IMG/VR virus record: IMGVR_UViG_3300027899_000001
Span: 310,001-374,000 of that record
Reading direction: 5' to 3' (one strand)
DNA: 64,000 bases
The notes beneath the pieces are model-generated. The model saw only the letters and a program-made list of their open reading frames with translations. It was not told the DNA's origin and did no database searches. Position 1 is the stretch's first letter. Each line of letters begins with the position of its first letter. The position numbers were made by a program, and so were the translations under genes. Of this stretch, positions 1 through 54,618 are shown piece by piece.

Positions 1-515
1 TCATCATTTATAGTATAATGTTTAATTTCATACTCATCTAACCATTTTTTTATTTTGATTTTAAATCCTATACCCATATCATAAATAGGATCTGATTCTT
101 CTGTAAAAGCCTCTGATATAGTATTTTTATTAAGTTCGCTTTCTTTAAAAACTTTAAAATATTTTTTCCAACGTGAAATTGACGCAGTATTTGTTGCTTG
201 AGAATATGTTCTTTCTTTTCCATTTAATATATTCTTTCTTATATCTAAAAATATTGGATTAATAGTGTATCCATAAGGAACAAGATTTAATTGTAATTCA
301 TTTTTTGATAAATGTTTTATGTGATATACTATGTATAAACCAGTAGCGGGAAATGGCGTCTTATCATTAAATGCAAAATATTTACTTTCTTTAAGACATC
401 TAAGAACATCTCCTACTTCAAGATTTTCAAAACCCTTATAACCTATTCCCATATCTTTAATAGGATCAAACTCTTCAGTAAATTTTTCGTTAATATGTTC
501 TCTAATCAATTTCAT
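1..515 (-). CDS. Partial protein with two copies of the EKFxEExDPIxDMGIG motif (runs off window edge)
   Basis: Manual translation MKLIREHINEKFTEEFDPIKDMGIG...ISEAFTEESDPIYDMGIG...IKKWLDEYEI; no stop before base 1; same architecture as 28438..29262. Confidence 0.8.
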   Translation of the reverse strand, partial: MKLIREHINEKFTEEFDPIKDMGIGYKGFENLEVGDVLRCLKESKYFAFNDKTPFPATGLYIVYHIKHLSKNELQLNLVPYGYTINPIFLDIRKNILNGKERTYSQATNTASISRWKKYFKVFKESELNKNTISEAFTEESDPIYDMGIGFKIKIKKWLDEYEIKHYTIND

Positions 516-871
516 TAATCTTTAATGATGTATTTTTCTGTTGGAATTATATGATATGTAAGAGTAGTTATTCCTTTTCCTTTTACATTTATTAATCCGT
601 CTCTATTCATAATTATTTCATCGACAAGAACTTCACAATGTTTTCGTGTAGAGGAGTATTTTCCAGCTTCATATAGATCCATTATTCCAGATATTCGTTT
701 TCCATGAAATTGATATACAAATTTTACCCATTTTTGCCATACTAGATTTTCAAAATCTTTGTATATAGAAAAATATTTATCTTCAAATACTATATATCCT
801 ATACCTAAATCATGTATTGGATCTGACTCTTCAGTAAATTTTTCGTATAATTTCTCCTTTAATTTTTTCAC
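515..871 (-). CDS. DPIxDMGIG-motif family protein
   Basis: ORF track; N-terminal EKFTEESDPIHDLGIG; stop overlaps next start (TAATG). Confidence 0.75.
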   Translation of the reverse strand: MKKLKEKLYEKFTEESDPIHDLGIGYIVFEDKYFSIYKDFENLVWQKWVKFVYQFHGKRISGIMDLYEAGKYSSTRKHCEVLVDEIIMNRDGLINVKGKGITTLTYHIIPTEKYIIKD

Positions 872-959
872 TCGAGATATTATTATTTGTTTTATATATT
901 CCTATATAAACGACAAAAGAGAGACTGAGGGAGTCTCTCTTAAATCGACAAGAGGGTTG

Positions 960-1652
960 TTATAAATTTATCAACATACTAGCAACTCTTTTATTTCCCC
1001 TGTCATCAATACAGGCAATAAAATCGCCGCCAAAAAAATCTAATCGAGGAGTAACCTGAGGAGTATGTCCAAACACCTGATTTATTCCGTTATAAGGATC
1101 GTCAAGAACTTCCATGTAATCTGCCCAAAGTGGACCCGGAGTTCCTCTTCCGCCTCTCATTCTTCCAACTTTCCATATTAATTCTTGTCTATCATGAATT
1201 CTATTTAATGTGTCATGAATTAATTCGCCTTCTTTCATTTCAGGTTTAATAAAAAATTCATCATAATTTGTAGTGTATCCCGCGTGAGTAGCAAGAGTAT
1301 ATTTTTTAGTTGTATCATTAGTATATCCCCAAGCCATTTGAAACAAATCTGCATTATCATCAAAAATCTTTTTATATTCCCATGCAAATTCGTATTGTTT
1401 TCCGGTTATACCATCTATGCCGTGCATATATGCATAATCATGATTTCCGATAAGAAGCGTAACTTGATCTTTATTTTTACGAGCAAAGTTACAAATATTA
1501 TTAAGATTATATAACTGTATACTACGTTTAACAAAGAAACTATCTACATAATCGCCAAGAAACACGATTTTATAGAAATTTTTCATTCCTTCTTTAGCGA
1601 GTTCTTCCCACTCTATTAATCCATGTATATCCCCTATAAATAGTACTTTCAT
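960..1652 (-). CDS. Calcineurin-like metallophosphoesterase
   Basis: GDIHG, GDYVD, GNHD, THAG, GHTP motifs. Confidence 0.9.
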   Translation of the reverse strand: MKVLFIGDIHGLIEWEELAKEGMKNFYKIVFLGDYVDSFFVKRSIQLYNLNNICNFARKNKDQVTLLIGNHDYAYMHGIDGITGKQYEFAWEYKKIFDDNADLFQMAWGYTNDTTKKYTLATHAGYTTNYDEFFIKPEMKEGELIHDTLNRIHDRQELIWKVGRMRGGRGTPGPLWADYMEVLDDPYNGINQVFGHTPQVTPRLDFFGGDFIACIDDRGNKRVASMLINL

Positions 1653-1718
1653 TTTGTTTGTTTTTTAATTATATGTAAATATAAACAAAATACTTGACAG
1701 AAAAAAATTATTTACATA

Positions 1719-1991
1719 TTAATTTGATAATTCCATCTTTACATGTGCAACAATTTCAGATATTTCTTCTATTTTATTTTGAATTATATCCATTTCTGAT
1801 AAATATACGCTTAAATTTGTGCAAATTTCTTGAAGATATTCTTCATTAATTGGCTGTTTATCTAATTCATCTGTTAGTTCATTGAATTGATTTTGAACTT
1901 TAGTGTAATTTTCCTTAAGTACATTTAATCTATCTTTGAACTCACCAAGCAGATAAACTTTTGCGGTGTGTTCAAAACTTTGAGTTGTCAT
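1719..1991 (-). CDS. Hypothetical coiled-coil protein
   Basis: ORF track, co-oriented. Confidence 0.6.
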   Translation of the reverse strand: MTTQSFEHTAKVYLLGEFKDRLNVLKENYTKVQNQFNELTDELDKQPINEEYLQEICTNLSVYLSEMDIIQNKIEEISEIVAHVKMELSN

Positions 1992-2011
1992 TTTATGAAG
2001 TATTTAACATT

Positions 2012-2200
2012 TTATTTTTTTTCGACATTTTTTTCTATATTTTCTATTATGCTAAGATTACAAGGAAATGAATATATAACTTGTTTTCCTTTATCATAAA
2101 ATCTATATACACCATCTTGTACTGAAAAAGAATAAGCATATATATTATAATTAAGATTAGCGCCGCCTGGATTTATTACCAGAATTTTATATAAGTTCAT
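2012..2200 (-). CDS. Hypothetical protein
   Basis: ORF track. Confidence 0.55.
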   Translation of the reverse strand: MNLYKILVINPGGANLNYNIYAYSFSVQDGVYRFYDKGKQVIYSFPCNLSIIENIEKNVEKK

Positions 2201-2204
2201 TGTA

Positions 2205-2504
2205 TTAAAATCTAAACATTCCCATGGATTTTAAAATTTGTGCTTTATATTCTGGAGAATTTTGTATCTTCAGAATTTGTTTATACAAATCAGATTGTTT
2301 TAAGAAATATTCAGGTATGAATATTGGGCAAATCAACCATATTAAACAAGATCTAACAAACCAAAATGGATAGTAATAAATTTTACCCAATTTAGTAATA
2401 AATCTCCAATCTTCTTTTATATATTCTTTATATACATAAAGAGTAAAAAGGATACAAAAATCTATAAATTTTTTCATTTTTCGTTTATTTGTTTTCGTAT
2501 TCAT
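2205..2504 (-). CDS. Hypothetical protein
   Basis: ORF track. Confidence 0.55.
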   Translation of the reverse strand: MNTKTNKRKMKKFIDFCILFTLYVYKEYIKEDWRFITKLGKIYYYPFWFVRSCLIWLICPIFIPEYFLKQSDLYKQILKIQNSPEYKAQILKSMGMFRF

Positions 2505-2623
2505 CTTCTAAAATTATTTCATCATCAGATTGATCGTTATCATTATCTTTTATTAAATAACGAGCTTTTGGTTTTTCTTCTTTTTTCTTTAAACCAAATT
2601 TCTTTTCGTCTTCATCATAACCG

Positions 2624-2794
2624 TTATACATCTTCTTTATCTCTAGTAAAATACAAATAAATCGGGCAGAATATACAAAGTCCTATAGCAGACCATGTTA
2701 CTGCGGCAGGTGTAAATGGTACAAATAAAAACGAAATTGCCGCGCCTGTTATCCATCCTATTGTAATTGTTAACGCTCTGTAAAATGTTTTCAT
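2624..2794 (-). CDS. Small membrane protein (56 aa)
   Basis: Manual translation MKTFYRALTITIGWITGAAISFLFVPF...; directly downstream of promoter motif at 2817. Confidence 0.55.
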   Translation of the reverse strand: MKTFYRALTITIGWITGAAISFLFVPFTPAAVTWSAIGLCIFCPIYLYFTRDKEDV

Positions 2795-3166: not shown

Positions 3167-3179
3167 AATTAAAAATTTG

Positions 3180-8053: not shown

Positions 8054-10585
8054 TTACCTTAAAAATGTAACATCGCCAACTTTTTCGAAGTAATCACCAT
8101 TTATGTATCTTCCTGAGGCTCTCCATACATAAACTCCTTGAGGCGCAAGATTTCCATCTTCAAAATATCCATCCCAGCCTTTCATTAAATCTCTACTTTC
8201 ATAGATAAGAACTCCCCATCTATTAAATATTTGAAGATAATATTCTATGACATTTTCAAAATGAGGTCTAAAAACATAATCCATTTCTGAATATACTCCT
8301 TCTTGCCATTGTCCACCAGTTGGTCCTGAACCATTCCATTTAAAAGCATTTGGAAATTTTATAGTTCCTCCTGACCATTTAACAGTTATGGGTAAATTAC
8401 TTAATACATTATCACTGCATCCGTAATCATTTTTTGCATATAATGTAACCCAGTAAGAACCTTCATTCTCATATTTATGCCAAGGATTTATATCATAACT
8501 TAATTCGGTTCCATCTCCAAAATCCCATGCATAATAATCTGCGTACTGAGAATAATTATAAAATGTAACTATTTGAGTATTACTATAAATATCTTTAGGA
8601 TAATAATCAAATGATGCAATAGGACTTTGAAATACAGTAACCATTCCTTGGTGAAAAGAAGATCCTGCAATATTATATACAGTTAATCTTACAATATAAG
8701 AACCTGGAAGATTATAAGTATGTACAGGATTAAATTCATTAGAATAAGATCTATCTCCAAAATCCCATAAATATGATTCTCCATATACACTTAAATTTCT
8801 AAATGTAACTACCATTGGATTACATCCTACAGTATCTGGAGCAAAATAAGCTAAAGGAACAGGAGGCAATACAACTTGAATATGAATAGTATCAAATGTC
8901 GTGCATCCCCATTGATCAGGAGGAATAGTATATGTAACTACATGTTCTCCTATATCTGCAATTTTTGGATCAAAGGTGGAGCCCACAACTCCTATTCCAC
9001 TCCAAATTCCGCCTTCAGGTGTTGCATGTAATACTACAGATGGTCTATTAAGAAAAATAGTTCCGACTTGTTGTATTTCTATATTAGGAATAGGCATTAC
9101 AGTTACAATAGTGCTATCTACATCTTGGCAATCTGTATTTACAATATTATAGACTATTAAATGATCTCCAGGACCTGTAATTTCTGGATGAAATACATTT
9201 CCAATCATTCCTAATCCTGTCCAAATTCCACCTAAATCATGTGTATTTACTGTAATAGGCGTACTATTCACACATAAAGTATCTACAGGAGTTATCGTTG
9301 CATTCGGAGTTGCTACAGTTATAGTTGTTGTATCACTATTACTACATCCACTTACATTTATACTATAAATAATTCTATGATTTCCCGATCCCGCCAAAAT
9401 AGGATCAAATACATTTCCTACAACTCCTGCTCCTATCCATGTGCCTCCTGGATCATGTGCTACTAAAGTAACAGGCGCATCAGAAGAACATACTATACTT
9501 GGTGCAGATATCGTTGGATCAGGAATTGGCGATACTCTTATATATGTTGTATCACTATCACTGCATCCTTCTCCACTTGTTATTGTATGTATAATTCTAT
9601 GATTTCCTGGGCCTGCAACTGTAGGATTAAAAATATTTCCCGAAACTCCGGGTCCTGACCATTCTCCATTTGGAGACACACTTGTTAAAGTTACAGGATT
9701 TGCATTTGAACACATCGAATCAACAGGATTGATTGCTGCATCGGGATAAGGAACTATTAATATAATAGCAGTTGTAACCACTGGAGGAAAATCTCCATTT
9801 ACTTTATCTCTTGGTTGTCCGGGAATACTTGGGTCATCATAAGGATTACAATAATTCCAGTTTCGTAATGTTACTTGAAAATATTGTCCAACTAATTTAT
9901 CATTAGCTACATTCATTACATCTGAATAAACACCCGATCCTGTAACAGGACCAGGAAGAGTAATTATGCGAGCTGTATCTGGATACATTGTAGAATGTCC
10001 ATCTATTGTAACAGGAATTCCTGTCATAGTTATATCAGTTCCATAAATCCATTGTATCCATCTTGTATTAATATTTGGATTATCTCTTTCTTGAGGTGGA
10101 ACACAATTAAATAAAGTTAAATCTTGAAATCTAACATCTGCTCCATTTCCAAAGCATATTGGATAAACAGTAGGATCAATATGCATACGTCCACCATTAT
10201 GATTATCATCATCCCATACAGTTACTATTTGTTCTTGTGCTGAAGAAGTGCAAAGAACACCATTAACTCTAAGCATCGCTTGAGGATGATAATTACAAAC
10301 ATCTCCAGCTGACGTATAGGTATTAGTTGCCGTTGCTTGAAAAATACCAGGACCTACCATAACTGCTGGAACATCTACAACAGTACCATTATTCCAATCA
10401 AATTGAATACTTACAGGCGTACCAGCATCATTAACTCCAGTATAACTTACATTCCAAACTGCTATAACAGGAGAACATAATTTATCTGGAGTAATATTAT
10501 TAGCTTTAGAAAATATTGTACAAGTTTGCCCAAAAATATTAAGCGAAAGAAATGATAAAATTAAATATAGAAACCATTTTTTCAT
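8054..10585 (-). CDS. PKD-domain protein with T9SS type-B (gliding-motility) C-terminal sorting domain
   Basis: Signal peptide, SGxGV repeats, YLWDFGD PKD motifs, C-terminal IFNRWGVLIYES...GWDG...GVYVW. Confidence 0.85.
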   Translation of the reverse strand: MKKWFLYLILSFLSLNIFGQTCTIFSKANNITPDKLCSPVIAVWNVSYTGVNDAGTPVSIQFDWNNGTVVDVPAVMVGPGIFQATATNTYTSAGDVCNYHPQAMLRVNGVLCTSSAQEQIVTVWDDDNHNGGRMHIDPTVYPICFGNGADVRFQDLTLFNCVPPQERDNPNINTRWIQWIYGTDITMTGIPVTIDGHSTMYPDTARIITLPGPVTGSGVYSDVMNVANDKLVGQYFQVTLRNWNYCNPYDDPSIPGQPRDKVNGDFPPVVTTAIILIVPYPDAAINPVDSMCSNANPVTLTSVSPNGEWSGPGVSGNIFNPTVAGPGNHRIIHTITSGEGCSDSDTTYIRVSPIPDPTISAPSIVCSSDAPVTLVAHDPGGTWIGAGVVGNVFDPILAGSGNHRIIYSINVSGCSNSDTTTITVATPNATITPVDTLCVNSTPITVNTHDLGGIWTGLGMIGNVFHPEITGPGDHLIVYNIVNTDCQDVDSTIVTVMPIPNIEIQQVGTIFLNRPSVVLHATPEGGIWSGIGVVGSTFDPKIADIGEHVVTYTIPPDQWGCTTFDTIHIQVVLPPVPLAYFAPDTVGCNPMVVTFRNLSVYGESYLWDFGDRSYSNEFNPVHTYNLPGSYIVRLTVYNIAGSSFHQGMVTVFQSPIASFDYYPKDIYSNTQIVTFYNYSQYADYYAWDFGDGTELSYDINPWHKYENEGSYWVTLYAKNDYGCSDNVLSNLPITVKWSGGTIKFPNAFKWNGSGPTGGQWQEGVYSEMDYVFRPHFENVIEYYLQIFNRWGVLIYESRDLMKGWDGYFEDGNLAPQGVYVWRASGRYINGDYFEKVGDVTFLR

Positions 10586-13518: not shown

Positions 13519-14460
13519 CTAAATATAAGGTGTTGGTGTTATTTTCATTTTTCCAAATTTCTCTTCATATTTTGCTAATTTAGCTTGGCCATCTCCGTTT
13601 AATAAATAGGCTCCTGTTTTTTTATCTATATGTATTTTTGGATGAACTATATCTTTAATACCATCTCCCCAATATCCTACATTTGTTAATGGATGATAAC
13701 TTCCTTTTCCATAAGTTAATTCATACAAAAATTTAGAAAGTTCTTTATCACTGGTTACTGTATTTTCATTTATGTATTTTAAGACTCTATAAATTTTATA
13801 TCCATGAGGATATGATTGTCCCTGTTGTGATTTTTGAACTCCTAAAAATAATTTAATTTTATCAAGTTTTTTCTGATCTCTTGGATGAACTAATTCTGGT
13901 AATTCATCTATATGATCTCTTAAATATTGTATAATTTTGTCATGTTGTGCAACTTTTGAAAATAATCTAAAATTATAATCTGTTTGAAAAAGTGCATTAA
14001 TCATTCCAATTTTTAACTTATCTCCTCTTTCAATACATTTCTTAAATAAAGAAAAATTACCAGCTTTGCATGCTACCGTTAATTCTTCTTCAGGTGAAAG
14101 TGTTGCAAGAGTTCCTTCTAAATTTAAAACATAATAAGCTTTTTGAGATAAATCTTCAAATTTTGCGCCCCTTTGTATTAAAGTATCTACAAATTCATGC
14201 ATTTCATAAGAAAAAGAATTTTGTAATGCTCTTTGAACGTTATAATCAGAATGATGATTTATTATATATGAAATAAAATCTTTTTTTCTTTTATAAAAAC
14301 ATTGATCTAAAGCATCATTTATTTGATTTTTTATATCAATTCTTCTCCAAAGTTCTAAAGTATCTAACCAATTCTGTATTTTATGATCCATGCCTATTCC
14401 CATATCATAAATAGGATCGGACTCTTCAGTAAATTTTTCGAATATACGCCAAGCTTTCAT
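13519..14460 (-). CDS. DPIxDMGIG-motif protein with ankyrin-like helical repeats
   Basis: N-terminal motif; LTVACKAGNFSLFKKCIERG segment. Confidence 0.7.
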   Translation of the reverse strand: MKAWRIFEKFTEESDPIYDMGIGMDHKIQNWLDTLELWRRIDIKNQINDALDQCFYKRKKDFISYIINHHSDYNVQRALQNSFSYEMHEFVDTLIQRGAKFEDLSQKAYYVLNLEGTLATLSPEEELTVACKAGNFSLFKKCIERGDKLKIGMINALFQTDYNFRLFSKVAQHDKIIQYLRDHIDELPELVHPRDQKKLDKIKLFLGVQKSQQGQSYPHGYKIYRVLKYINENTVTSDKELSKFLYELTYGKGSYHPLTNVGYWGDGIKDIVHPKIHIDKKTGAYLLNGDGQAKLAKYEEKFGKMKITPTPYI

Positions 14461-18487: not shown

Positions 18488-19471
18488 TTAAAATTCAGGA
18501 CATGGAAGAGCTCTCATTCGTTGTTTTCCATTTCTTTCAAAAAATCTATTAAATTCATAGATAAATGAAATTTCATGAGCTCCAACTGTTGCTCTATTGA
18601 GACTAGAAATTGTAAAATCGTAACTATAGCCAACAAATATATTTTTTGTTTTTAATCCTGCTAAACCTATAACTGCATCTCCTGGTTGATTTGATAATCC
18701 TGGAATGCCTCTATACCAAAGTCCTAAAATAAGTGGAGGTCTTGCATAATAAACTCCTACATCTGCTTGATAAAACTTTCCTTGGGTTTGTAAATTAACT
18801 GCTAAAGAAACAACATCTTGTCGTTCTATTTTAAGTCTTTGTTTCTTTATTATTTGTATTCCTCCATATAAGTTTACCTTTACTGGAACTCTTGATTCAT
18901 CTCCATAAAAAGAAATTTTAGGAGTTAACATATGATCTACTGTTACTCCACTCCATATTCTATCATTATACGCTATTATCGATGAAGCAAAGTCTATACT
19001 TGCTGAATTATCAAAAGTTGGTGGAATAACTGGAGGAGTATTGTTTATATTACTATTAAATATAAGTTTGTTAATATCTAATCCTAAATATTGAAATTTG
19101 AAATTAACACCAGGCCTTACATGCCATGTATTATTAATTTTAATATCATAAGAATATAAAGCTCCTATTGTTGTATTACTTAAATCTCCTGATCCTGCTA
19201 CATCGTATGATGCAATTATTCCTATTCCTGAATTATATTGAGGTAACGCTTTATCAAATGAAACACTATAAGTGTTATAGATATTTGATATTCCAGGCCA
19301 CTGATTTCTATAATTCATTGTTAATCTATAATCTTCTGTAGCACCTGCAAAAGATGGCGCTAACCATAACTTGTTGGCATAAAATTGTGAATACGTTGGA
19401 TCTTGTGCAAAAGTATTTGAATAGATTACAAATAACAGAATAAATGAACATATGTATTTTACAATACGCAT
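18488..19471 (-). CDS. PorP/SprF family T9SS outer-membrane protein
   Basis: QDPTYSQFY...APSFAG...YRNQWPG...YSYDFTIS...HEISFIY. Confidence 0.9.
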   Translation of the reverse strand: MRIVKYICSFILLFVIYSNTFAQDPTYSQFYANKLWLAPSFAGATEDYRLTMNYRNQWPGISNIYNTYSVSFDKALPQYNSGIGIIASYDVAGSGDLSNTTIGALYSYDIKINNTWHVRPGVNFKFQYLGLDINKLIFNSNINNTPPVIPPTFDNSASIDFASSIIAYNDRIWSGVTVDHMLTPKISFYGDESRVPVKVNLYGGIQIIKKQRLKIERQDVVSLAVNLQTQGKFYQADVGVYYARPPLILGLWYRGIPGLSNQPGDAVIGLAGLKTKNIFVGYSYDFTISSLNRATVGAHEISFIYEFNRFFERNGKQRMRALPCPEF

Positions 19472-27902: not shown

Positions 27903-28103
27903 TTATTCTTCTTTTATATAAGCGTTTTTTACTTTAACGTTTTTCTTTACAGCATTTATAAACTGCCATGGATTTTCAATTCCATAAATTTCTTTTCTAT
28001 AATTATTATCATATATTATGACTACACAATATGTAACAGGTTTAAGAGGCACATACCCATTAAAAAAGGATTTTGGATTATATGATTTAAAAAAATCACT
28101 CAT
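27903..28103 (-). CDS. Hypothetical protein
   Basis: ORF track. Confidence 0.55.
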   Translation of the reverse strand: MSDFFKSYNPKSFFNGYVPLKPVTYCVVIIYDNNYRKEIYGIENPWQFINAVKKNVKVKNAYIKEE

Positions 28104-28441
28104 TTATGTACTTTAAATCCTTTATCTTTTAGTAGTGCTTGTATACCAGATCTATACCAACTAAACGCAGTTTGAGGATTACCTTTAACTGTAATATATT
28201 TTGTAATAAAATCTCCTATTTTTTGATCATATTTATGAGGAAACCAGTTATCAGCAGATCTTATTATATCTTCAGGAATTTCACGTGTTTCTAAGATTTG
28301 ATGTAAATGATCTACTATCCATTTATCTAATTCTAACCAAGTATTAAAATCGCGATGTACATAAAGTCCAATTCCCATATCTTCTATAGGATCCGATTCT
28401 TCTTTAAATACTTCATTTATATTTTCTCTAACTAATTTCAT
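28100..28441 (-). CDS. DPIxDMGIG-motif family protein
   Basis: MKLVRENINEVFKEESDPIEDMGIG. Confidence 0.75.
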   Translation of the reverse strand: MKLVRENINEVFKEESDPIEDMGIGLYVHRDFNTWLELDKWIVDHLHQILETREIPEDIIRSADNWFPHKYDQKIGDFITKYITVKGNPQTAFSWYRSGIQALLKDKGFKVHK

Positions 28442-29262
28442 TCGTAAAAAGGCATTTTAACTTTACAAATCTTTCTAATTTTCGCTTCAGTAATTCCATA
28501 ATGCATAGACATACAAACAGTTCCATCTATTCTTTTTGGAAATCCTTTTAATGATCTTATATCGTTATCTGATGCATTAAAATCTTCTTTTACATATTCA
28601 GGAAATCCTATGCATGATTGTATAGTTCCTGGAACACAAAAATTTCCATACACATGGTGAAATTTAATATATTCAGGAAGTTTTTTATATTTTGGATAAG
28701 TATTTCTAACACAATATAAATTTACTTGACCTTGTACTGTAATGCTTAAATCTTTATTTATAGTATAATCAATAATATTCATTTCTTTAAGCCAATCTTT
28801 AATCTTTTTAATGATTCCTATACCCATGTCTTGAATAGGATCAGTATCTTCAGCAAATTTTTCATTAACTGATTCATTTATTTTTAATACATCAAAATAT
28901 TCGTCCCAAACTTCTATAGGGGCAGATCCATATGTATAATAATATCCTCCCGAATCTATATACCTTCTTGCTGTTATAGCGTTCTGCACATTATCTCCAA
29001 AATTAATTATTACTAAACTTAAAATATTTTTTTCTTTGTTTACTTCTTTAACTATACTAGTATTGCCTTTACGAATTCTTGCGGTGACCTTTTCAATATT
29101 TTCGTCAAAAATAATATCATTGTTTTTTTGATATAAATCTTGTTTAACTATAATTATATCTCCTTTCTTTATTCTCGTAAATTTAGATCCAATACCTAAA
29201 TCCCATATGGGATCAGTTCCTTGTTCAAATTTTTCATTTATATGTTCTTTTACTATTTTCAT
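28438..29262 (-). CDS. DPIxDMGIG-motif protein with two motif-headed domains
   Basis: Motif at N-terminus and internally (NEKFAEDTDPIQDMGIG). Confidence 0.8.
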   Translation of the reverse strand: MKIVKEHINEKFEQGTDPIWDLGIGSKFTRIKKGDIIIVKQDLYQKNNDIIFDENIEKVTARIRKGNTSIVKEVNKEKNILSLVIINFGDNVQNAITARRYIDSGGYYYTYGSAPIEVWDEYFDVLKINESVNEKFAEDTDPIQDMGIGIIKKIKDWLKEMNIIDYTINKDLSITVQGQVNLYCVRNTYPKYKKLPEYIKFHHVYGNFCVPGTIQSCIGFPEYVKEDFNASDNDIRSLKGFPKRIDGTVCMSMHYGITEAKIRKICKVKMPFYE

Positions 29263-30736: not shown

Positions 30737-31951
30737 TTATTTTATATTAAGTTGATATTTACAAAATTCTATCATTTTTTCATCTCCTGTATGTTTTCCT
30801 TCTGAATCAGACAATTTAATACAAGGTACCCATTCATCGTCAGGATCAGGTTTTGCTGCAATTAGTTTAATAACCATATTAAGTGGGTTAACTCCAACAT
30901 CATTAGATAAATTTGTGCCTATTCCCATTGCGCATTTAATTTCTTTATTACATGATTTTGTTAATTCAATTGCAAGATCAGGATTAAGATTATCTGAAAA
31001 AATTATAGTTTTATCATTGGGGTCAATTCCCATACTTTGATAATGTTTAATAACTTTTTCTGCAAAATGAAATGGATTTCCACTATCATGTCTTACACCA
31101 TCAAAAAGCTTTGAGAATTTTTTTCCAAATGATTTAAAGAATGATTCTGTTGTAAATGTATCTGTAAGAGCAATTCCAAGATCACCTTGATAAACATTTG
31201 ACCAGTTTTCAAGAGCTAAAAAATTTGCTTGTTTAAATCCATATTTTGCAGCATGAAACATAAACCATTCATGTGCATGAGTTCCTATTGGAGTAAGATT
31301 AAACATATGAGCAAAGTGTACATTAGAAGTTCCATTAAAATTATCTCTCATACTAAATGCTAAATCTTCTACAACTTCTTTTTGATTTTCATATGAATAT
31401 CTTCTACGAGTTCCAAATTCAGAAATCTTAACTCCATGATTATTAAATAATGCAGCTTTTTTTAGATTATTTTGTTCTCTTTCTACTCTTGAATTTATTT
31501 TTTCTCCCGTCATTTTAAAATACAATTCAGATATAAGAGCAAGAAGTGGAACTTCCCAAAGAATTGTACGATACCAGTAGCCTTCTACAGTTACTTGAAG
31601 TTCACTTCCATTTTGTATAACTCCAACTTCTGAAGGATTATATCTATATCCTGCCAAAAAATCAAAATACGCAGGATCGATATATTTACATTTAGTTTCA
31701 AAGAAGTGTTTTTCTGCAGTCAAAAGTTTAAGAGAAGACATATGAGAAATTTGTAATCTTAGTTCTTCTGCAAATCCTTCTGGAAAATTTACTTTTGAAC
31801 GAACTATTAATGCATATTTAACTTTTGCTCTTGGAAAAAGTTTTAACACTGCATTCATCATACTAAATTTATAAAGATCGTTATCGAGTATTGATGTAAT
31901 TATAGGTTCCATTTTATATTTTTTTAGCATGAAAATAAGTGACTCCATCAA
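30737..31951 (-). CDS. pncB: Nicotinate phosphoribosyltransferase
   Basis: SILDNDLYKFSM, EFGTRRR, GTHAHEW, LTDT, GVRHDSG, KLSDSEGK. Confidence 0.95.
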   Translation of the reverse strand: MMESLIFMLKKYKMEPIITSILDNDLYKFSMMNAVLKLFPRAKVKYALIVRSKVNFPEGFAEELRLQISHMSSLKLLTAEKHFFETKCKYIDPAYFDFLAGYRYNPSEVGVIQNGSELQVTVEGYWYRTILWEVPLLALISELYFKMTGEKINSRVEREQNNLKKAALFNNHGVKISEFGTRRRYSYENQKEVVEDLAFSMRDNFNGTSNVHFAHMFNLTPIGTHAHEWFMFHAAKYGFKQANFLALENWSNVYQGDLGIALTDTFTTESFFKSFGKKFSKLFDGVRHDSGNPFHFAEKVIKHYQSMGIDPNDKTIIFSDNLNPDLAIELTKSCNKEIKCAMGIGTNLSNDVGVNPLNMVIKLIAAKPDPDDEWVPCIKLSDSEGKHTGDEKMIEFCKYQLNIK

Positions 31952-34538: not shown

Positions 34539-35474
34539 TCATAATTCTTCCTTTTTATTTTTAACATATCTATTGTATATACTATTTTCATTTTCTATTA
34601 TATCGTGTCTATATATATTGACAGGATTATTTCTTTTGAATTGAGATTTTAAATGTCGTTGAATGACAGAGTGTTGACGCATTTTATTAATTTCATCCAT
34701 ATATACTGCATTAACAGTTGGTGAATGTTTTTCAATAAAGTCTAAATATTCTTTAAGTATTCTATCAACTTCTTTATAACCATCTCTAGAATTTCCTGTC
34801 CAGTCTGGCATTATTTGTCCAAGATCTCCAAGATTTGTAACTCCAAGGCCATCAGTTGCAAGTGCAGTTATCGTATTTATTATTGTACTTCCTGCTTCAT
34901 AATTTCCAGCATATTCATTCATAGTTAACCATTCTGCCATATCATATACTTCTGTTTTCCAAAGATTTTGTATCATACCATAATCACCTACATCACCATG
35001 AAGAGTCCAAAAACCAAGAAGAAATTCTGTATAATTATCAGTAGAAAGAACTATTCCACGATGATATGAAGCTAAATCATACAAATAAATCATACGCAGT
35101 CTTGCTTTAAGATTTCCATTACGTATACGACTTGATGAACCTTCAGGATTAGGCGCATGAAACAGCATATTAGATTCCATTTTGGAATACATAAAATTAT
35201 ATTCTTCTTCAACGCTATGCTCTAAGAATTTTGTACAAAATACTTTTCCTGTTAATTTGGCTCTTTCTAATTCTTCTGGTTGATTTGAACTTACTGGCAA
35301 ACTTCTTCCTATAAGTGGAATATTTAATTCATCACAAACTGGTCTAGCAAGTGCTGCGCAAAGACAACTATCTATTCCACCTGAAATCCCTATAATAAGA
35401 GACTTTATATTATTGTTTGTAATATACAGACTTAATTCTTTTCGAATATTCGATACTGCTATTTGATAATTCAT
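34539..35474 (-). CDS. nadE: NH3-dependent NAD synthetase
   Basis: GISGGIDS, NLKARLRM, STDNYTE, FWTLHGD, KTEVY. Confidence 0.9.
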   Translation of the reverse strand: MNYQIAVSNIRKELSLYITNNNIKSLIIGISGGIDSCLCAALARPVCDELNIPLIGRSLPVSSNQPEELERAKLTGKVFCTKFLEHSVEEEYNFMYSKMESNMLFHAPNPEGSSSRIRNGNLKARLRMIYLYDLASYHRGIVLSTDNYTEFLLGFWTLHGDVGDYGMIQNLWKTEVYDMAEWLTMNEYAGNYEAGSTIINTITALATDGLGVTNLGDLGQIMPDWTGNSRDGYKEVDRILKEYLDFIEKHSPTVNAVYMDEINKMRQHSVIQRHLKSQFKRNNPVNIYRHDIIENENSIYNRYVKNKKEEL

Positions 35475-50968: not shown

Positions 50969-51020
50969 ATGTAACACTTGTTCATTACTACATTGCTGAG
51001 AAAGCCGAAAAGTGTGTAAT
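50969..51020 (-). ncRNA. Possibly permuted Ro-binding stem
   Basis: ACACTT-TTCG..CTCA-GCAA-TG-T-AG..TGAA-C-AAGTGT-TACAT. Confidence 0.45.
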
Positions 51021-51045
51021 TAGCTTTTAACTTTTCCCCCATTTG

Positions 51046-51128
51046 AGACCGAGAAGGGATTCGAACCCTTGTGAGCTTTCGCTAATGGTTTTGCAGACCA
51101 TCCTTTTCAACCACTCAAGCACTCAGTC
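51046..51128 (-). tRNA. trnC-GCA: tRNA-Cys(GCA) with long variable arm
   Basis: ATGGT-CTGCAAA-ACCAT, AGC-GAAA-GCT arm, U73. Confidence 0.85.
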
Positions 51129-51307
51129 AAATTTTATTCCAATATTTCAAATAACTTATAATGCAAATATAATACTAATTTCTGAATTAAAAAAATATTT
51201 TTGCATTTATTTTCTATTTTTTTTACTTATCTTAAAAATTGTATACAAATATAAACAATAATCTTGATATAAAAAAATAATTTAACACTTATTTTAAAGA
51301 ACTATAT

Positions 51308-51339
51308 AAACAAAGAACCCTCCGTATTTTGGAGGGTTC
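51308..51339 (-). terminator. Intrinsic terminator (attenuator of tRNA array 3)
   Basis: GAACCCTCC-AAAATAC-GGAGGGTTC-TTTGTTT. Confidence 0.85.
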
Positions 51340-51367
51340 AGAAAGGAGTATATAATAAATGATATTA

Positions 51368-51478
51368 TTACCTACGCTTAACTATTCCCTCCGTTTTAAC
51401 AAAATAACATAACGGTAGCTGCTCGCTAACTTGTGGGAGTTGTTGTGAAAAAGAAGAATATGTAGGTTTCAATATCAT
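51368..51478 (-). promoter_or_regulatory. Leader peptide MILKPTYSSFSQQLPQVSEQLPLCYFVKTEGIVKRR (attenuator 3)
   Basis: 36-codon ORF upstream of terminator; Q/L/P/E/C/Y/F run. Confidence 0.75.
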
Positions 51479-51570
51479 CACTTAATATTTCTTAATTTTA
51501 ATATATATCAATGTATATTTGTAAATTATATATACTGAATGCAAAAAGTTTTAAAAAAATGAAAAATAAT

Positions 51571-51792
51571 TTAATCATTAAAAATTTTAACCAAATATAA
51601 TGCTTCTTGTCTTTGTAAAAGTTCTTCATTTAATCTATCATGCAGATCTTCTATATTTACTAAACCATTCTTTTTGGCTGCTTTAACGTAATTATTTATT
51701 AGAACCTTACAATTAGTTATCTGATCTTCATTTTGACAAGAATTTATAATTCCTAATATTTTTTTAACTGGTACAGAATTTTTATTTTTCAT
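51571..51792 (-). CDS. Hypothetical protein
   Basis: ORF track. Confidence 0.55.
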   Translation of the reverse strand: MKNKNSVPVKKILGIINSCQNEDQITNCKVLINNYVKAAKKNGLVNIEDLHDRLNEELLQRQEALYLVKIFND

Positions 51793-51809
51793 GGCATTAT
51801 ATAATTTTT

Positions 51810-52208
51810 TTATTTCATTGTTATCTTATACGTGTGACTATCATCTAAAGAATACGGAGTTCCTCTTCTAGTATAAACACGAACTTCATAAATTCTATCA
51901 GACATATTTACACTACTAAAGTCTAATTTTATTTTAACTACTTCTATAGAAATATTTTTAGCCCATTTATATGTGTTAAAATTAAAAAAATCACCCGTTA
52001 TTATTTTTCCTAATAATTTTTGTTTAAATAATTTGCGTAATTGAGCACGTCTTTTTTTAATTATAGTACTAATGTCTTTTTGTACATTTGTATAATATAT
52101 TTCATTTTGATCTCTTAAAATAAAATTCTCTTTGTATCCTATACCCATATCTTTTACTGGATCGGAATCTTCAACAAATTTTTCATTTATATGTTCTTTA
52201 ACTATCAT
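51810..52208 (-). CDS. DPIxDMGIG-motif family protein
   Basis: EKFVEDSDPVKDMGIG; GKIITGDFF shared with 52913. Confidence 0.75.
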   Translation of the reverse strand: MIVKEHINEKFVEDSDPVKDMGIGYKENFILRDQNEIYYTNVQKDISTIIKKRRAQLRKLFKQKLLGKIITGDFFNFNTYKWAKNISIEVVKIKLDFSSVNMSDRIYEVRVYTRRGTPYSLDDSHTYKITMK

Positions 52209-52211
52209 AAT

Positions 52212-52618
52212 TTAAATCATTCTTAATGTATACATATTTTTGTAGTCTTCTAAAACAAAAGAATTTCCATCTTCATCATATACGCGAACTTCAGAAAGAG
52301 TATCACACCCATATCCATCATGAAAACTTACTCTTATTCTAACTACATTTACAGTTTTATTTTTTAGTGGTCTATAATAATCTCCTTTTTTAACTAAAAA
52401 AGTTCCTGTCATTTCTTTACCAACTAGTTTTTCTTTTAATTCTTTACGTAAAGTTTTTCTATATTTTTCTACTATCTTTTGAAATTGTTGATATGTGTAT
52501 GAACCATATTCTTTTTTTGTTTAGAAAAATCATATTCTTCCTTATGACCTATACCCATTTGACGAATAGGATCACCTTCTTCTTTAAACTTTTCAAATAT
52601 ATGTTCTTTAACTATCAT
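52212..52618 (-). pseudogene. DPIxDMGIG-motif protein split by a -1 frameshift at A-AAA-AAG (~52512-52518)
   Basis: MIVKEHIFEKFKEEGDPIRQMGIG...SKQKK then -1 frame EYGSYTY...LVGKEMTGTFL matching flanking paralogs. Confidence 0.65.
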
Positions 52619-52905
52619 GCGGGTATTCTCCAATGTGTTTTTAAAAATTCTTCTTCAGTATTAAAAGTTGTTATATCAATATTTTTTGTTATTATAAAAT
52701 TATACCATAATTGTTCCCATTGATCAACATTTTGTAATTTTCCTGCTTTGTGTCTTTTCATTAGATCTTTTACATAATTCCAATTATTTATAATTTCTAA
52801 AACAGTTTCATTATGAATTATATATTCAGGCACGGACTGTTGAGCTTGCATATTTTGTTGTCCTGGTCCAAAGAACGCTTGAAAAAAATGTGGTGGTTGT
52901 TGCAT
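52615..52905 (-). CDS. Hypothetical protein, Gln-rich N-terminus
   Basis: ORF track. Confidence 0.55.
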   Translation of the reverse strand: MQQPPHFFQAFFGPGQQNMQAQQSVPEYIIHNETVLEIINNWNYVKDLMKRHKAGKLQNVDQWEQLWYNFIITKNIDITTFNTEEEFLKTHWRIPA

Positions 52906-52912
52906 ATTTATT

Positions 52913-53305
52913 TTATTTAGCTGTTATTACATATTCTTGTTCACCCCAACTAGAGGTATTCATATTATATTTTCTTCCTTTATTTGATGTTACTATTAAT
53001 TCTCTTACATATCCATAATCTAAATCTACTACAACTTCAACACTTTTTATTAATAATGATCTTGTCATTTCTTTATATTCTGTAAAAAAATCACCCGTCA
53101 CAATTTTTCCAACAAATTTTTCACTCAGTTCTTTTTGTAATGAACTTTCCATTATTTTTAAAAGTTTTCTTTTTTCTTTATTAAATTTTTTCGCGTGAGT
53201 TGTACATAACACTTCCATATCAATTTTTTCTTTGTATCCTATACCCATATCGTGTATAGGATCAGATTGTTCCTGAAATTTTTCAAATATGAAGTGAGCT
53301 TTCAT
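52913..53305 (-). CDS. DPIxDMGIG-motif family protein
   Basis: EKFQEQSDPIHDMGIG. Confidence 0.75.
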   Translation of the reverse strand: MKAHFIFEKFQEQSDPIHDMGIGYKEKIDMEVLCTTHAKKFNKEKRKLLKIMESSLQKELSEKFVGKIVTGDFFTEYKEMTRSLLIKSVEVVVDLDYGYVRELIVTSNKGRKYNMNTSSWGEQEYVITAK

Positions 53306-53310
53306 TTAGA

Positions 53311-54087
53311 TTATTTTATTTTGAATAATTTTCTAAATAATCCTCGTGATGCTTTATGAGCATCTGCTTTTGCTGATAGATTTTCAGGATTTGAATCAGC
53401 ATCAATAGCAGTCCAAACTTCCCACTGAAATCCCCATTCAGCAAAAGGAAAATAAGTATATCCTTGATCGCCCCATTCTGCTGTCCATGAATTTCTAATA
53501 ATAAATTTATCTTTAAGATATCCAGCAACACAAACTGCATGTCCACCTAACATTTCTTGACCAGTAAAATCTGGTTTCCAAAAATCCATTTTATCTGAAT
53601 TAAATACTGGAAATGCAATATAACAAGGTCCATTAGCAAATAAAGCTTTTTTAAGTGAATCTACTGTATTGATTTGAGCATATCCTTGAATTTTATATTT
53701 AGCTGCTTTAAATTTTAATTCTGGCGTAATAGCTTTAAATTGTCCATAAGGATAATCTTTTTCTGTAACAATTCCAATCTTATATAAAATATCCATTGTA
53801 TCTCTTGGTGTCATTCCAGAAGATTCTTGATTTGATCTTAAATTATATACAAATTGAGGTGATAAATATTCTCTAAGTTCAACATCTGTTAATTCTTCCC
53901 ATTCTTTAAGTGCTGCTGCAGTTTGTGCAGAGCATGTACCTTGCTGACCTTGATCTCTTACTGGTCTCATTTGAGGTCTCAAATCCCATATTTCTGGAAG
54001 AACTACTCTGTTAGGATATATTGATTCTAACATAAAGTCCCTTTTATCTACGGGAGATTTTTCAAGATTAAATAAATACTTTTGCAT
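53311..54087 (-). CDS. Papain-like C1 cysteine peptidase
   Basis: VRDQGQQGTCSA, GGHAV, IRNSW..WGDQGY. Confidence 0.9.
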   Translation of the reverse strand: MQKYLFNLEKSPVDKRDFMLESIYPNRVVLPEIWDLRPQMRPVRDQGQQGTCSAQTAAALKEWEELTDVELREYLSPQFVYNLRSNQESSGMTPRDTMDILYKIGIVTEKDYPYGQFKAITPELKFKAAKYKIQGYAQINTVDSLKKALFANGPCYIAFPVFNSDKMDFWKPDFTGQEMLGGHAVCVAGYLKDKFIIRNSWTAEWGDQGYTYFPFAEWGFQWEVWTAIDADSNPENLSAKADAHKASRGLFRKLFKIK

Positions 54088-54096
54088 ATTATTAAA

Positions 54097-54618
54097 TTAT
54101 TTTAATTTATCTACTACACTTTTTATTTTTTCTGCGCTTTTTATAATGTGATCTAATGTATCTAAAAAATATTGATTAACTGGAGTATACTTATTACGAA
54201 AATCTACTGATGATCTTTTGTCTCCTGGCATAATTTCTTTATCTTGCCATATATTATATACTGGTTCAAAATATATTTTTATTGTTCTATATGAATATGA
54301 ACTTGGAATGCCTGCACCTGTCACTCTATATAATGCCGTAATTATATCTGGAAATTTTACATCATCTTCATACCATAATTGATTAGCGCCTTGTTTTACA
54401 CAAAATTTAATAAGATTTATTCTTTCAAATGTATTTTCTGCATAATGAGTTACTCCGATTACTAATATATCATTATATGTTGATTGAGAAGTAATTTCTT
54501 CTCTAGAGTATTCCGGAAATTTTTTTAATATTTGAGCAAGTGGACCAATACCCATGTCTTTAATAGGATCTGATTCTTCAGAGAATTTTTCATTAAGATA
54601 TTCACGTACACGGTCCAT
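54097..54618 (-). CDS. DPIxDMGIG-motif family protein
   Basis: EKFSEESDPIKDMGIG. Confidence 0.75.
   Translation of the reverse strand: MDRVREYLNEKFSEESDPIKDMGIGPLAQILKKFPEYSREEITSQSTYNDILVIGVTHYAENTFERINLIKFCVKQGANQLWYEDDVKFPDIITALYRVTGAGIPSSYSYRTIKIYFEPVYNIWQDKEIMPGDKRSSVDFRNKYTPVNQYFLDTLDHIIKSAEKIKSVVDKLK

What the first reader, a model, noticed from the sequence alone, without database searches (positions are those of the whole stretch)
1..54618. Family of unrelated proteins sharing an N-terminal EKFxEExDPIxDMGIG tag
Seen: the ~25-residue motif heads ORFs at <1..515, 515..871, 13519, 28100, 28438, 51810, 52212/52618, 52913 and 54097. It recurs internally in two of them, in front of a second domain, while the downstream sequences mostly differ. 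Established: T4 internal head proteins share an N-terminal capsid-targeting sequence cleaved after Glu by the prohead protease. Inference: a packaging or injection tag, or a recombination handle for domain shuffling, used to deliver a library of effectors; internal copies suggest polyprotein processing.
Basis: partly seen in the sequence, partly recalled or inferred. Interest (0 to 1): 0.7.

Follow-up and report, generated by a model that had tools for sequence, protein, structure and literature searches.

The report
Shared leader peptide on megaphage proteins
An uncultivated 405-kb T4-like freshwater phage spends a tenth of its genome on about 87 small protein-binding modules that each begin with the same flexible 18-25-residue leader. 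The leader most likely serves to load them into the phage head and to cut them apart, so that they can enter the host with the DNA.

Summary
The window holds 11 copies of the motif in 9 ORFs, all on the minus strand; chance predicts none. The whole 405-kb genome holds 87 copies in 63 ORFs (10% of the DNA).

Conservation is at the protein level. Synonymous codons are used about as the genome uses them.

Structure models show the tag as a flexible leader or linker, not a domain. It precedes modules of about 100 aa: ankyrin, LRR-like, SH3-like and unmatched folds.

The phage is T4-like and related to Lak megaphages. It has a gp23-type capsid protein and a gp21-type prohead protease fused to a scaffold.

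- The tag's first ten residues (MKLVREHINE) echo T4's capsid-targeting sequence (MKTYQEFIAE).
- Its [ILV]-N-E matches the capsid protein's maturation site (LNE|A), which aligns with T4's LTE|A.
- [ILV]NE is most enriched in the scaffold.

The tag occurs in 1,649 metagenomic protein clusters. None was confirmed in 185,579 cellular genomes or found in GenBank phages, and it has no Pfam family.

Best reading (about 0.5): a head-loading and processing leader for a library of ejected binder proteins. The polyproteins would be cut at each tag. No virion data exist, so this stays an inference. A DNA-level recombination handle is not supported.

The parts
3..515 (-). Tagged two-module ORF of 273 aa; its 3' end runs off the window's left edge to genome 309694. 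The N-terminal tag is at 441-515 and the internal tag core at 66-119. Module 1 is SH3-like and module 2 is LRR-like. The prohead protease-scaffold and capsid genes lie next downstream on this strand, after one short plus-strand ORF.
515..871 (-). Tagged single-module ORF of 118 aa with a GTG start. The tag is at 797-871. A promoter-like ATATATAAA lies upstream.
13519..14460 (-). Tagged ORF of 313 aa with the short leader variant MKAWRIFEKF. The tag is at 14392-14460. A promoter-like motif lies upstream.
28100..28441 (-). Tagged ORF of 113 aa from the small alpha/beta cargo family (11 paralogous modules in the genome). The tag is at 28367-28441. In the AF2 model residues 1-13 are disordered and the domain (about 28-113) is confident.
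28438..29262 (-). Tagged two-module ORF of 274 aa. The N-terminal tag is at 29188-29262 and the internal tag core at 28816-28869. The SH3-like and LRR-like domains are modelled as beads on a string, and the internal V-N-E-K-F segment has pLDDT below 50.
51810..52208 (-). Tagged ORF of 132 aa. The tag is at 52137-52208. It is a paralog of 52913-53305.
52212..52633 (-). Frameshifted third paralog of the 51810/52913 family. The tagged N-terminus (tag 52547-52618) is in one frame and the C-terminal two thirds (52212-52412) in another.
52913..53305 (-). Tagged ORF of 130 aa with the short leader variant MKAHFIFEKF. The tag is at 53237-53305.
54097..54618 (-). Tagged ORF of 173 aa. The tag is at 54544-54618. 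Its paralog lies at genome 79949-80464. A promoter-like motif lies upstream.
53311..54087 (-). Context: an untagged papain-family (C1) cysteine peptidase gene sits inside the tag cluster. It is a possible alternative processing enzyme.

Best explanation
The motif is a flexible leader peptide, not a domain. It marks a large, lineage-specific family of small soluble proteins in a T4-like megaphage that probably infects Bacteroidota. I propose it has two parts. The first part, M-K-[IL]-V-[RK]-E-[HY]-[IL]-N-E at N-termini, reduced to [ILV]-N-E at internal copies, would work like the T4 capsid-targeting sequence and end in a cleavage site for the phage's gp21-type prohead protease. The second part, the invariant K-F-x-E-E-S-D-P-I-x-D-[ML]-G-I-G, would stay on each released module and hold it to the scaffold core or to the inner face of the capsid shell. 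Its D-[ML]-G-I-G resembles the L-G-I core of encapsulin cargo-loading peptides. Proteins with several modules would be cut at each tag into units of about 125 aa. The cargo is ankyrin, LRR-like, SH3-like and unmatched small folds, mostly basic and never membrane-like. It would be carried in the head and enter the host with the DNA, where such binding modules could block host defence or take over host proteins.

Shown: the family, its anatomy, protein-level conservation, the tag's disorder, the T4-type protease, the L-N-E site in the capsid protein by homology, and the restriction to phage and metagenome sequences.

Inferred: targeting, cleavage, packaging, ejection and what the cargo does.
For: (1) The genome is T4-like. 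It has a Gp23 capsid protein and a Peptidase_S77 (gp21) protease fused to a 781-aa scaffold. Its nearest capsid relatives are Lak megaphages at 48% identity.

(2) In N-terminal copies the ten leader residues give M1, K2, E6, [IL]8 and E10. T4 ipII and ipIII read MKTYQEFIAE. In T4, residues 8 and 10 govern processing and the first 10 residues suffice for targeting (PMC9026906).

(3) In the tag the P3 position is aliphatic in 85 of 87 copies and P1 is Glu in 85 of 87. Internal copies keep exactly this site.

(4) The capsid protein's L41-N42-E43|A-A-M-G-G aligns with T4 gp23's L63-T64-E65|A-E-I-G-G. That is the end of T4's 65-residue propeptide (PMC5694885). The site is kept in relative G006.

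(5) The protease-scaffold is the protein most enriched in [ILV]NE in the proteome: 10 sites, Poisson P 1.4e-7. Several sites are nearly invariant in 60 homologs although their flanks vary.

(6) AF2 gives pLDDT below 50 for residues 1-13 of a single-module protein. For a two-module protein it gives pLDDT below 50 for residues 131-137, which hold the internal V-N-E-K-F, between two confident domains, with pTM 0.50.

(7) The module is the unit. Tag spacing has a median of 126 aa (IQR 116-141) over 350 intervals in 150 unrelated metagenomic proteins. The SH3-like then LRR-like pair occurs fused four times and once as two adjacent genes. Many best hits link a fused module to a stand-alone gene.

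(8) Two tagged genes lie next upstream of protease-scaffold and capsid protein on the same strand, with one short opposite-strand ORF between.

(9) A motif like the T4 late promoter, ATATATAA[AT], precedes the portal, sheath, fibre and protease-scaffold genes. It heads 16 of 29 transcription units that hold tagged genes against 32 of 132 others (P 0.0016).

(10) Cargo is more basic than other proteins of 80-300 aa: 70% against 44% have pI above 8. None of 63 tagged ORFs has a membrane-like segment, against 62 of 453 genes overall.

(11) In one relative an ankyrin module sits inside the prohead scaffold protein itself.

(12) The tag is found in 1,649 metagenomic clusters and on many IMG/VR contigs, with no confirmed copy in 185,579 cellular genomes.
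Against: There are no virion, proteomic or expression data; the phage is uncultivated and no RNA run is on record as holding this stretch. The most conserved block lies after the proposed cut, unlike T4, where the conserved peptide is the part removed. Likeness to the T4 CTS is 5 of 10 residues over 10 residues, and likeness to encapsulin peptides is a 5-residue core; both could be chance. Lys-Phe follows the proposed cut in the tag, whereas Ala follows it in the capsid protein. [ILV]-x-E is a common tripeptide. The tag is absent from Lak-A2, from LR756500, and from a 323-kb relative whose protease is 75% identical. Head loading in this clade therefore does not need it. The promoter-like motif also precedes many small genes, among them HNH-type and Cys/His-rich ones, and its timing is unknown. 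The complex prediction of protease domain with tag gave no verdict.
Confidence: 0.5

Rival explanations
1. The tag is a processing and docking leader that works in the infected cell's cytoplasm, not in the head. Polyproteins would be cut there, for example by the papain-like C1 peptidase encoded inside a tag cluster, whose liking for a hydrophobic P2 residue would fit a cut after K-F-x. Alternatively the acidic D-P-I-x-D-M-G-I-G peptide would bind a common host or phage hub, so that many binder modules are recruited to one place or switched on together.
For: The C1 peptidase at window 53311-54087 lies between tagged genes. It is absent from the tag-less relative G006 and present in the tag-bearing fragments G007 and G001. 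Phe at the second residue after the Glu is invariant in 86 of 87 copies. The best conserved block lies downstream of the [ILV]NE site, as expected for a binding peptide. The tag is disordered, as short linear motifs are.
Against: This does not explain why the leader copies the T4 CTS pattern in length and key positions. It also does not explain why [ILV]-N-E equals the capsid maturation site and is concentrated in the scaffold. The co-occurrence with the peptidase rests on incomplete fragments; it was not found in G004, which has 58 tags. No hub partner is known.
Confidence: 0.2
2. The tag is an anchor that fixes interchangeable binding modules to the outside of the virion, on a decoration protein, head fibre or tail-fibre branch. 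This would give a variable adhesin coat, as conserved N-terminal anchors do for sets of tailspikes in other phages.
For: Ankyrin, LRR-like and SH3-like folds are binding modules. A conserved N-terminus with variable C-termini is also the pattern of multi-tailspike phages (own knowledge). The promoter-like motif is shared with structural genes.
Against: Internal tags inside multi-module proteins, and the [ILV]-N-E site kept at every junction, are not expected of an anchor. Modules of about 100 aa that are mostly basic do not resemble known receptor-binding or decoration proteins. An ankyrin insert sits in an internal scaffold protein of a relative.
Confidence: 0.1
3. The repeat is kept mainly at the DNA level, as a recombination handle or gene-conversion tract that shuffles and amplifies cassettes. 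The peptide itself would have little function.
For: The genes lie in tandem arrays with fused and split versions. The tag is far more alike among copies (about 69% aa identity) than the cargo (50% or less).
Against: At identical residues the same codon is used in 65% of pairs, against 61% expected from genome codon usage. Nucleotide identity (73%) is about equal to amino-acid identity (69%). Copies on other phages keep the peptide, not the DNA. Invariant Glu, Phe, Asp, Pro and Gly point to selection on the protein.
Confidence: 0.05
4. The tag is simply the first element of one ordinary folded domain, and all the proteins are diverged paralogs of a single family.
For: Several cargo groups are clearly paralogous.
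Against: The cargo includes Pfam ankyrin repeats, an LRR-like solenoid and an SH3-like barrel, and a separate alpha/beta fold. The tag does not pack against any of them in the models. It also occurs between domains.
Confidence: 0.05

Closest known systems
T4 capsid-targeting sequence (CTS) of internal proteins IPI, IPII and IPIII, cleaved by the gp21 prohead protease
   Same: Both are short N-terminal leaders shared by otherwise diverse small, mostly basic proteins of a T4-type phage. The length (10 residues) and pattern M-K-x-x-x-E-x-I-x-E agree. Both end in [LI]-x-E, the protease's site. A gp21-family protease is present, and the capsid maturation site is homologous.
   Different: Here there are 87 copies, not 3. 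The leader also occurs inside proteins, at every module junction. The best conserved 15 residues lie after the presumed cut and would remain on the mature protein. The cargo is ankyrin, LRR-like and SH3-like modules. Neither cleavage nor packaging has been shown.
Ejection-protein paralog families of giant phages (SPN3US gp53/gp54, phiKZ inner-body proteins) with conserved N-terminal propeptides
   Same: These are paralogs that have diverged greatly but keep near-identical N-termini holding protease sites. They are packaged in the head and ejected (PMC5694885).
   Different: Those phages have a different cleavage motif (A/S-x-E), long propeptides (over 100 aa), few paralogs, and no tandem tag-module polyproteins. 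They belong to a different phage lineage.
Encapsulin cargo-loading (targeting) peptides
   Same: Both are short flexible peptides on diverse cargo. The encapsulin core is L-G-I (consensus DGSLGIGSLKG, native NTGGDLGIRK) and it binds a pocket on the inside of an HK97-fold shell (PMC7925596). The tag's invariant core is D-[ML]-G-I-G.
   Different: Encapsulin peptides are usually C-terminal, and the shell there is an encapsulin rather than a gp23-type phage capsid. The likeness covers only five residues and was not tested by any binding model.
Polyvalent proteins of phages and conjugative elements (Iyer et al. 2017, cited in PMC7824862)
   Same: These are multi-module proteins thought to travel with the DNA into the host and to act in conflict with host defences.
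   Different: By my own knowledge of the 2017 paper, which I did not read here, polyvalent proteins are very large, rich in enzymatic domains and often carry their own peptidase. Here the modules are small non-enzymatic binders, each with the same leader, and many are separate genes.

Membership tests
T4-type capsid-targeting sequence / internal head proteins | Short leader (10-19 residues) at the extreme N-terminus of the precursor | tested here: met
   In the 60 N-terminal copies Asp-Pro sits at about residue 14-20 in most cases (up to residue 36), and at residue 14-17 in 121 of 150 metagenomic proteins. Another 27 copies are internal, which T4 does not show.
T4-type capsid-targeting sequence / internal head proteins | Leader ends in the prohead protease site [LI]-x-E | tested here: met
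   P3 is I, L or V in 85 of 87 copies and P1 is Glu in 85 of 87. The capsid protein's homologous site is L-N-E|A.
T4-type capsid-targeting sequence / internal head proteins | Phage encodes a gp21-family (Peptidase_S77) prohead protease and a gp23-type capsid protein | tested here: met
T4-type capsid-targeting sequence / internal head proteins | Conservation is confined to the removed propeptide, and the mature parts share nothing | tested here: not met
   The strongest conservation (K-F-x-E-E-S-D-P-I-x-D-M-G-I-G) lies after the presumed cut.
T4-type capsid-targeting sequence / internal head proteins | Sequence homology to the T4 CTS | tested here: inconclusive
   5 of 10 identities with MKTYQEFIAE; the stretch is too short for statistics.
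T4-type capsid-targeting sequence / internal head proteins | Proteins are present in virions, cleaved after the Glu, and the leader is enough to load foreign proteins | not testable with these tools
   The phage is uncultivated. Only one DNA run holds it.
Encapsulin cargo-loading peptide | Core of two hydrophobic residues separated by Gly (L-G-I), in a flexible segment | tested here: met
   D-[ML]-G-I-G is nearly invariant. The segment has low to middling pLDDT. The consensus comes from PMC7925596.
Encapsulin cargo-loading peptide | C-terminal position, and an operon with an encapsulin shell gene | tested here: not met
   The tag is N-terminal or internal. The shell is a gp23-type phage capsid protein.
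Encapsulin cargo-loading peptide | Binds the inner face of the shell protein | not tested
Polyvalent proteins | Very large proteins that combine several enzymatic conflict domains, often with a processing peptidase | tested here: not met
   Pfam finds only ankyrin repeats in this genome's tagged proteins. In 40 metagenomic multi-tag proteins, ankyrin occurs in 24, with isolated single hits otherwise.
Any curated protein family for the tag itself (Pfam-A) | The tag matches a family model | tested here: not met
   No Pfam family covers the tag at E up to 0.1. The matching metagenomic proteins looked up are unnamed, 'hypothetical protein', or in one case 'ankyrin repeat protein'.
Ankyrin repeat (cargo of one subfamily) | Match to the Pfam Ank models above the curated cut-off | tested here: met
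   Ank_2 scores 83 and 62 bits for genome ORFs 244750-245451 and 245454-246500. 24 of 40 metagenomic multi-tag proteins match.

The most novel reading that the evidence does not exclude
A clade of freshwater megaphages of about 400 kb loads its head with a library of some 90 different small binder modules (ankyrin, LRR-like, SH3-like and folds with no match). It does so with a two-part leader. A T4-type targeting and cleavage peptide cuts polyproteins into units. An encapsulin-like D-[ML]-G-I-G anchor then holds every unit to the HK97-fold shell or its scaffold until ejection. The phage would thus inject a ready-made, fast-evolving arsenal against host defences. This would link phage internal proteins and encapsulin cargo loading through one mechanism.
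Probability: 0.3. Interest if true: 0.85.

Novelty: new variant of a known kind. Interest (0 to 1): 0.68.

Why it matters
If the reading is right, this is by far the largest known set of head-targeted proteins in any phage. It takes 10% of a 405-kb genome, and 1,649 sequence clusters exist in nature.

It also gives a simple sequence rule (leader plus [ILV]-N-E) for predicting which genes of uncultivated megaphages encode injected proteins.

It would show that eukaryote-like repeat modules (ankyrin, LRR) in a phage of bacteria can be ammunition against the bacterial host, not signs of a eukaryotic link.

The possible kinship with encapsulin cargo peptides bears on how HK97-fold shells recruit cargo.

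The leader could become a loading tag for engineered capsids.

Even if the packaging idea fails, the tag is a new, unannotated, very widespread short linear motif that needs a partner to be found.

Tried and rejected
- **Complex prediction.** Protease domain (alignment A4) with the tag (A1) scored 0.00, no verdict. It counts neither for nor against.
- **Fold searches.** Foldseek against PDB gave no match at E 0.001 or better for the small alpha/beta cargo or for the two-module model. VIA-align gave only middling Z (5.3-6.7) to LRR domains and SH3-like barrels, so those fold names are provisional.
- **Megablast of window 51000-57200 against GenBank phages.** No match.
- **tblastn of the six-module protein against GenBank phages.** Only the LRR-like part hit, in a Mahaphage-size record and two Vibrio phages; the tag never hit.
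- **Tag profile in close relatives.** Nothing in Lak-A2 or LR756500, and nothing in the 323-kb relative G006. A de novo search of G006 for any other large family with shared N-termini found none, only a few MK..V.ESLNE-type leaders.
- **Literature.** A search for 'DMGIG' found nothing relevant. Papers on moraphages, Jug phages and jumbo-phage comparative genomics do not mention such a tag.
- **Laying Logan contigs on 51000-56900.** This confirmed the sequence, including the frameshift. The 'joints' at tag and promoter positions have sides of only 28-33 nt and come from other copies, so they are not evidence of recombination.
- **Alternative genetic code.** Not needed. ORFs cover 94% of the genome under table 11 and all three stop codons are in use.
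- **Giant eukaryotic virus.** Rejected. There is no NCLDV capsid match, though that search matched nothing in the control genomes either, and T4-type capsid, portal, sheath and protease genes are present.
- **One alignment of 90 proteins** failed internally. It was repeated with 40.

Full report
**1. What is there**

A six-frame scan for D-P-[IVL]-x-[DEQN]-[ML]-G-[IVL]-G, allowing one substitution, finds 11 copies in the window. All are on the minus strand and all lie inside ORFs. A degenerate DNA version finds 10; 100 shuffles give none. Two copies are internal, in the ORF that runs off the left edge and in 28438-29262. The pair 52212/52618 is a single paralog broken by a frameshift. An independent Logan contig of the one public run that holds this DNA, a freshwater metagenome that may be its source, reads the same there.

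**2. The genome**

The window is bases 310,001-374,000 of a 405,016-bp IMG/VR virus record with direct terminal repeats. GC content is 29%.

- It has a T4 gp23-type major capsid protein, a second gp23/24-like protein and a gp21-type prohead protease (Peptidase_S77). No NCLDV capsid matched, though that search matched nothing in the control genomes either.
- PHROGs add a portal, a tail sheath and collagen-like tail fibres.
- The nearest capsid proteins in GenBank are those of Lak megaphages (48% identity), then a 462-kb uncultured phage. Tenacibaculum jumbo phages are at 30%.
- Genes related to type IX secretion in the window point to a Bacteroidota host.
- Table 11 suffices.

**3. Census and anatomy**

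Genome-wide there are 87 copies in 63 ORFs. Together these ORFs take 41.2 kb, or 10.2% of the DNA.

- Sixty copies head an ORF. Asp-Pro sits at about residue 14-20 in most of them, and in a few as far in as residue 36.
- Twenty-seven copies are internal or lie after a long N-terminal region. One ORF carries six. Successive copies are about 100-150 aa apart.
- N-terminal copies read M-K-[IL]-V-[RK]-E-[HY]-[IL]-N-E-K-F-x-E-E-S-D-P-[IV]-x-D-[ML]-G-I-G. A shorter variant begins M-[KR]-A-x-x-[IV]-[FYN]-E-K-F.
- Internal copies keep only [ILV]-N-E-K-F-x-E-E-S-D-P-I-x-D-[ML]-G-I-G.
- At conserved residues, codon choice follows genome usage. Two copies with the same residue use the same codon in 65% of cases, against 61% expected. 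Selection therefore acts on the peptide, not the DNA.

**4. The cargo**

After the tag come modules of about 100 aa.

- BLAST groups them into an LRR-like family (16 modules), a small alpha/beta family (11), an ankyrin family (10), several pairs, and many singletons.
- Ankyrin is confirmed by Pfam.
- A profile search adds an SH3-like family of six.
- AF2 models place the LRR-like and SH3-like labels on middling structural matches only, Z 5.3-6.7.
- The alpha/beta family has no PDB match.
- The LRR-like module is always the last module of its protein (16 of 16).
- The SH3-like then LRR-like pair occurs fused four times and once as two adjacent genes.
- Many best hits link a module of a fused protein to a stand-alone gene.
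- Paralogous cargo is at most 50% identical, while tags average 69%. The module with its tag is thus the evolutionary and presumably the functional unit.

None of the 63 ORFs has a membrane-like segment, against 62 of 453 genes overall. Cargo is more basic than other proteins of 80-300 aa: 70% against 44% have pI above 8, P 0.02.

**5. The tag is a flexible leader**

- In the model of the 113-aa protein (window 28103-28441), residues 1-13 have pLDDT below 50, while the domain from about residue 28 is confident.
- In the 274-aa two-module protein, both domains are confident.
- In that same model, residues 1-8 and 131-137 fall below 50. The second stretch holds the internal V-N-E-K-F.
- A pTM of 0.50 for this model shows no fixed arrangement of the two domains.
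- In both models only D-P-I-x forms a short helical turn.

**6. The link to head assembly**

- T4 ipII and ipIII begin MKTYQEFIAE|A. The tag's leader shares M1, K2, E6, I8 and E10.
- In T4 the first ten residues suffice for loading into the head, and residues 8 and 10 govern cleavage (PMC9026906). T-even internal proteins are described as diverse defence proteins that share only this sequence (PMC3012670).
- The capsid protein here reads ...H-A-L-N-E|A-A-M-G-G. This aligns with T4 gp23's ...S-F-L-T-E|A-E-I-G-G, the end of T4's 65-residue propeptide. The site is kept in a 72%-identical relative.
- The 781-aa protease-scaffold fusion holds ten [ILV]-N-E sites. It is the most enriched protein of the proteome (Poisson P 1.4e-7). 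Several sites stay nearly invariant in 60 homologs although their flanks vary.
- Sites at residues 163-202 lie just past the protease domain. A cut there would free the protease from the scaffold.
- Other [ILV]NE-rich proteins lie beside tag arrays.
- Two tagged genes sit next upstream of protease-scaffold and capsid protein on the same strand, with one short opposite-strand ORF between.
- ATATATAA[AT], which resembles the T4 late promoter TATAAATA (own knowledge), precedes the portal, sheath, fibre and protease-scaffold genes. It heads 16 of 29 transcription units with tagged genes against 32 of 132 others, P 0.0016.
- In one relative the scaffold protein itself carries an ankyrin insert.

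**7. Distribution**

- A profile of the tag finds 1,649 clusters (50% identity) among 1.84 billion proteins. Single proteins carry up to ten tags. Spacing has a median of 126 aa and an IQR of 116-141.
- Those looked up are metagenomic and unnamed, apart from one called 'ankyrin repeat protein'. One lies among phage replication genes.
- Pfam finds ankyrin in 24 of 40 multi-tag proteins.
- IMG/VR fragments of related phages carry 24 to 58 copies.
- No copy was confirmed in 185,579 species genomes, and none was found in GenBank phages.
- A 323-kb relative whose protease is 75% identical has none. It has only a few proteins with MK..V.ESLNE-type leaders, as this genome also has on some untagged proteins.
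- The short leader may therefore be older, and the full tag a lineage-specific extension that went with a large expansion.

**8. Interpretation**

The best-supported reading is a head-loading and processing leader. The N-terminal decapeptide targets, the prohead protease cuts after [ILV]-N-E at every tag, and the modules are carried in the head and ejected.

The second half of the tag would stay on each module. It is needed at internal copies too, so I infer it is an anchor. Its D-[ML]-G-I-G resembles the L-G-I core of encapsulin cargo peptides, which bind the inside of an HK97-fold shell (PMC7925596). This likeness is a lead, not a test.

Weak points:
- No virion data exist.
- Conservation lies after the proposed cut.
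- The motifs compared are short.
- Close relatives lack the tag.
- The complex prediction gave no verdict.

I put this reading at about 0.5. The rivals are:
- A cytoplasmic processing or docking motif, possibly served by the papain-like peptidase inside a tag cluster: 0.2.
- An external display anchor: 0.1.
- A DNA-level handle: 0.05, contradicted.
- Part of one ordinary domain: 0.05, contradicted.

**9. Novelty**

No Pfam family covers the tag, and no paper found here describes it. In kind it resembles the T4 capsid-targeting sequence and the conserved propeptides of giant-phage ejection proteins. It differs in scale, in its internal copies, and in the retained conserved block. I class it as a new variant of a known kind. 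Interest is fairly high because it offers a testable sequence rule for injected proteins of uncultivated megaphages.

Noticed in passing
window 53311-54087 (-): A papain-family (C1) cysteine peptidase gene without a tag sits between tagged genes. It is single-copy in the genome, absent from the tag-less 323-kb relative G006, and present in the tag-bearing fragments G007 (68% identity) and G001 (35%).
   Followed up: partly
window 52212-52633 (-): A third paralog of the 51810/52913 family is split by a frameshift after the tag, near a run of A. An independent Logan contig of the one public run that holds this DNA (possibly its source) reads the same. It could be a pseudogene, a shared read error or a programmed shift.
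   Followed up: partly
window 18488-19471 (-) and 8054-10585 (-): A PorP/SprF-type type IX secretion membrane protein, and an 843-aa protein with PKD domains and a CHU_C type IX sorting domain, are encoded by the phage. They point to a Bacteroidota host and to phage use of host secretion.
   Followed up: no
window 30737-31951 (-), 34539-35474 (-): NAD salvage genes, a nicotinate phosphoribosyltransferase and an NAD synthase, as reported for other jumbo phages.
   Followed up: no
window 36814-38517 (-), 55583-57142 (-): A TROVE (Ro-like) domain protein and a 519-aa SPFH/Band 7 flotillin-like protein.
   Followed up: no
genome-wide; in the window upstream of the ORFs at 515-871, 13519-14460, 28438-29262 and 54097-54618: A promoter-like motif, [GA]ATATATAAAATAAA, often sits just after a hairpin terminator and 14-30 nt before the start codon. 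It precedes the portal, sheath, fibre and protease-scaffold genes. It also heads 16 of 29 transcription units with tagged genes, and it precedes many small genes, among them HNH-type and Cys/His-rich ones.
   Followed up: partly
genome 155040-156890, 157439-157984, 239549-243001, 246497-248653 (outside the window): Untagged proteins unusually rich in [ILV]-N-E lie beside tag arrays. They are candidates for further prohead core or internal proteins.
   Followed up: partly
protein P0196 (protease-scaffold of a relative), residues about 600-690: An ankyrin-repeat insert lies inside the prohead protease-scaffold fusion of a related metagenomic phage.
   Followed up: partly
genome 37374-37730, 80951-81550, 265844-266251, 274974-276281; G006 85695-85988, 190548-191339, 274834-275313: Untagged proteins start with MK..V.E(S).LNE-type decapeptides, in this phage and in the tag-less relative. 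They may carry the older, minimal form of the leader.
   Followed up: partly
genome 306658-309003 (L001:10658-13003, -): The prohead protease is fused to a scaffold of about 570 aa that has W-x-x-E-[IV]-A-K...[LV]-N-E repeats. More than 5,000 homologs of this fusion exist in metagenomes, so the clade is abundant.
   Followed up: partly
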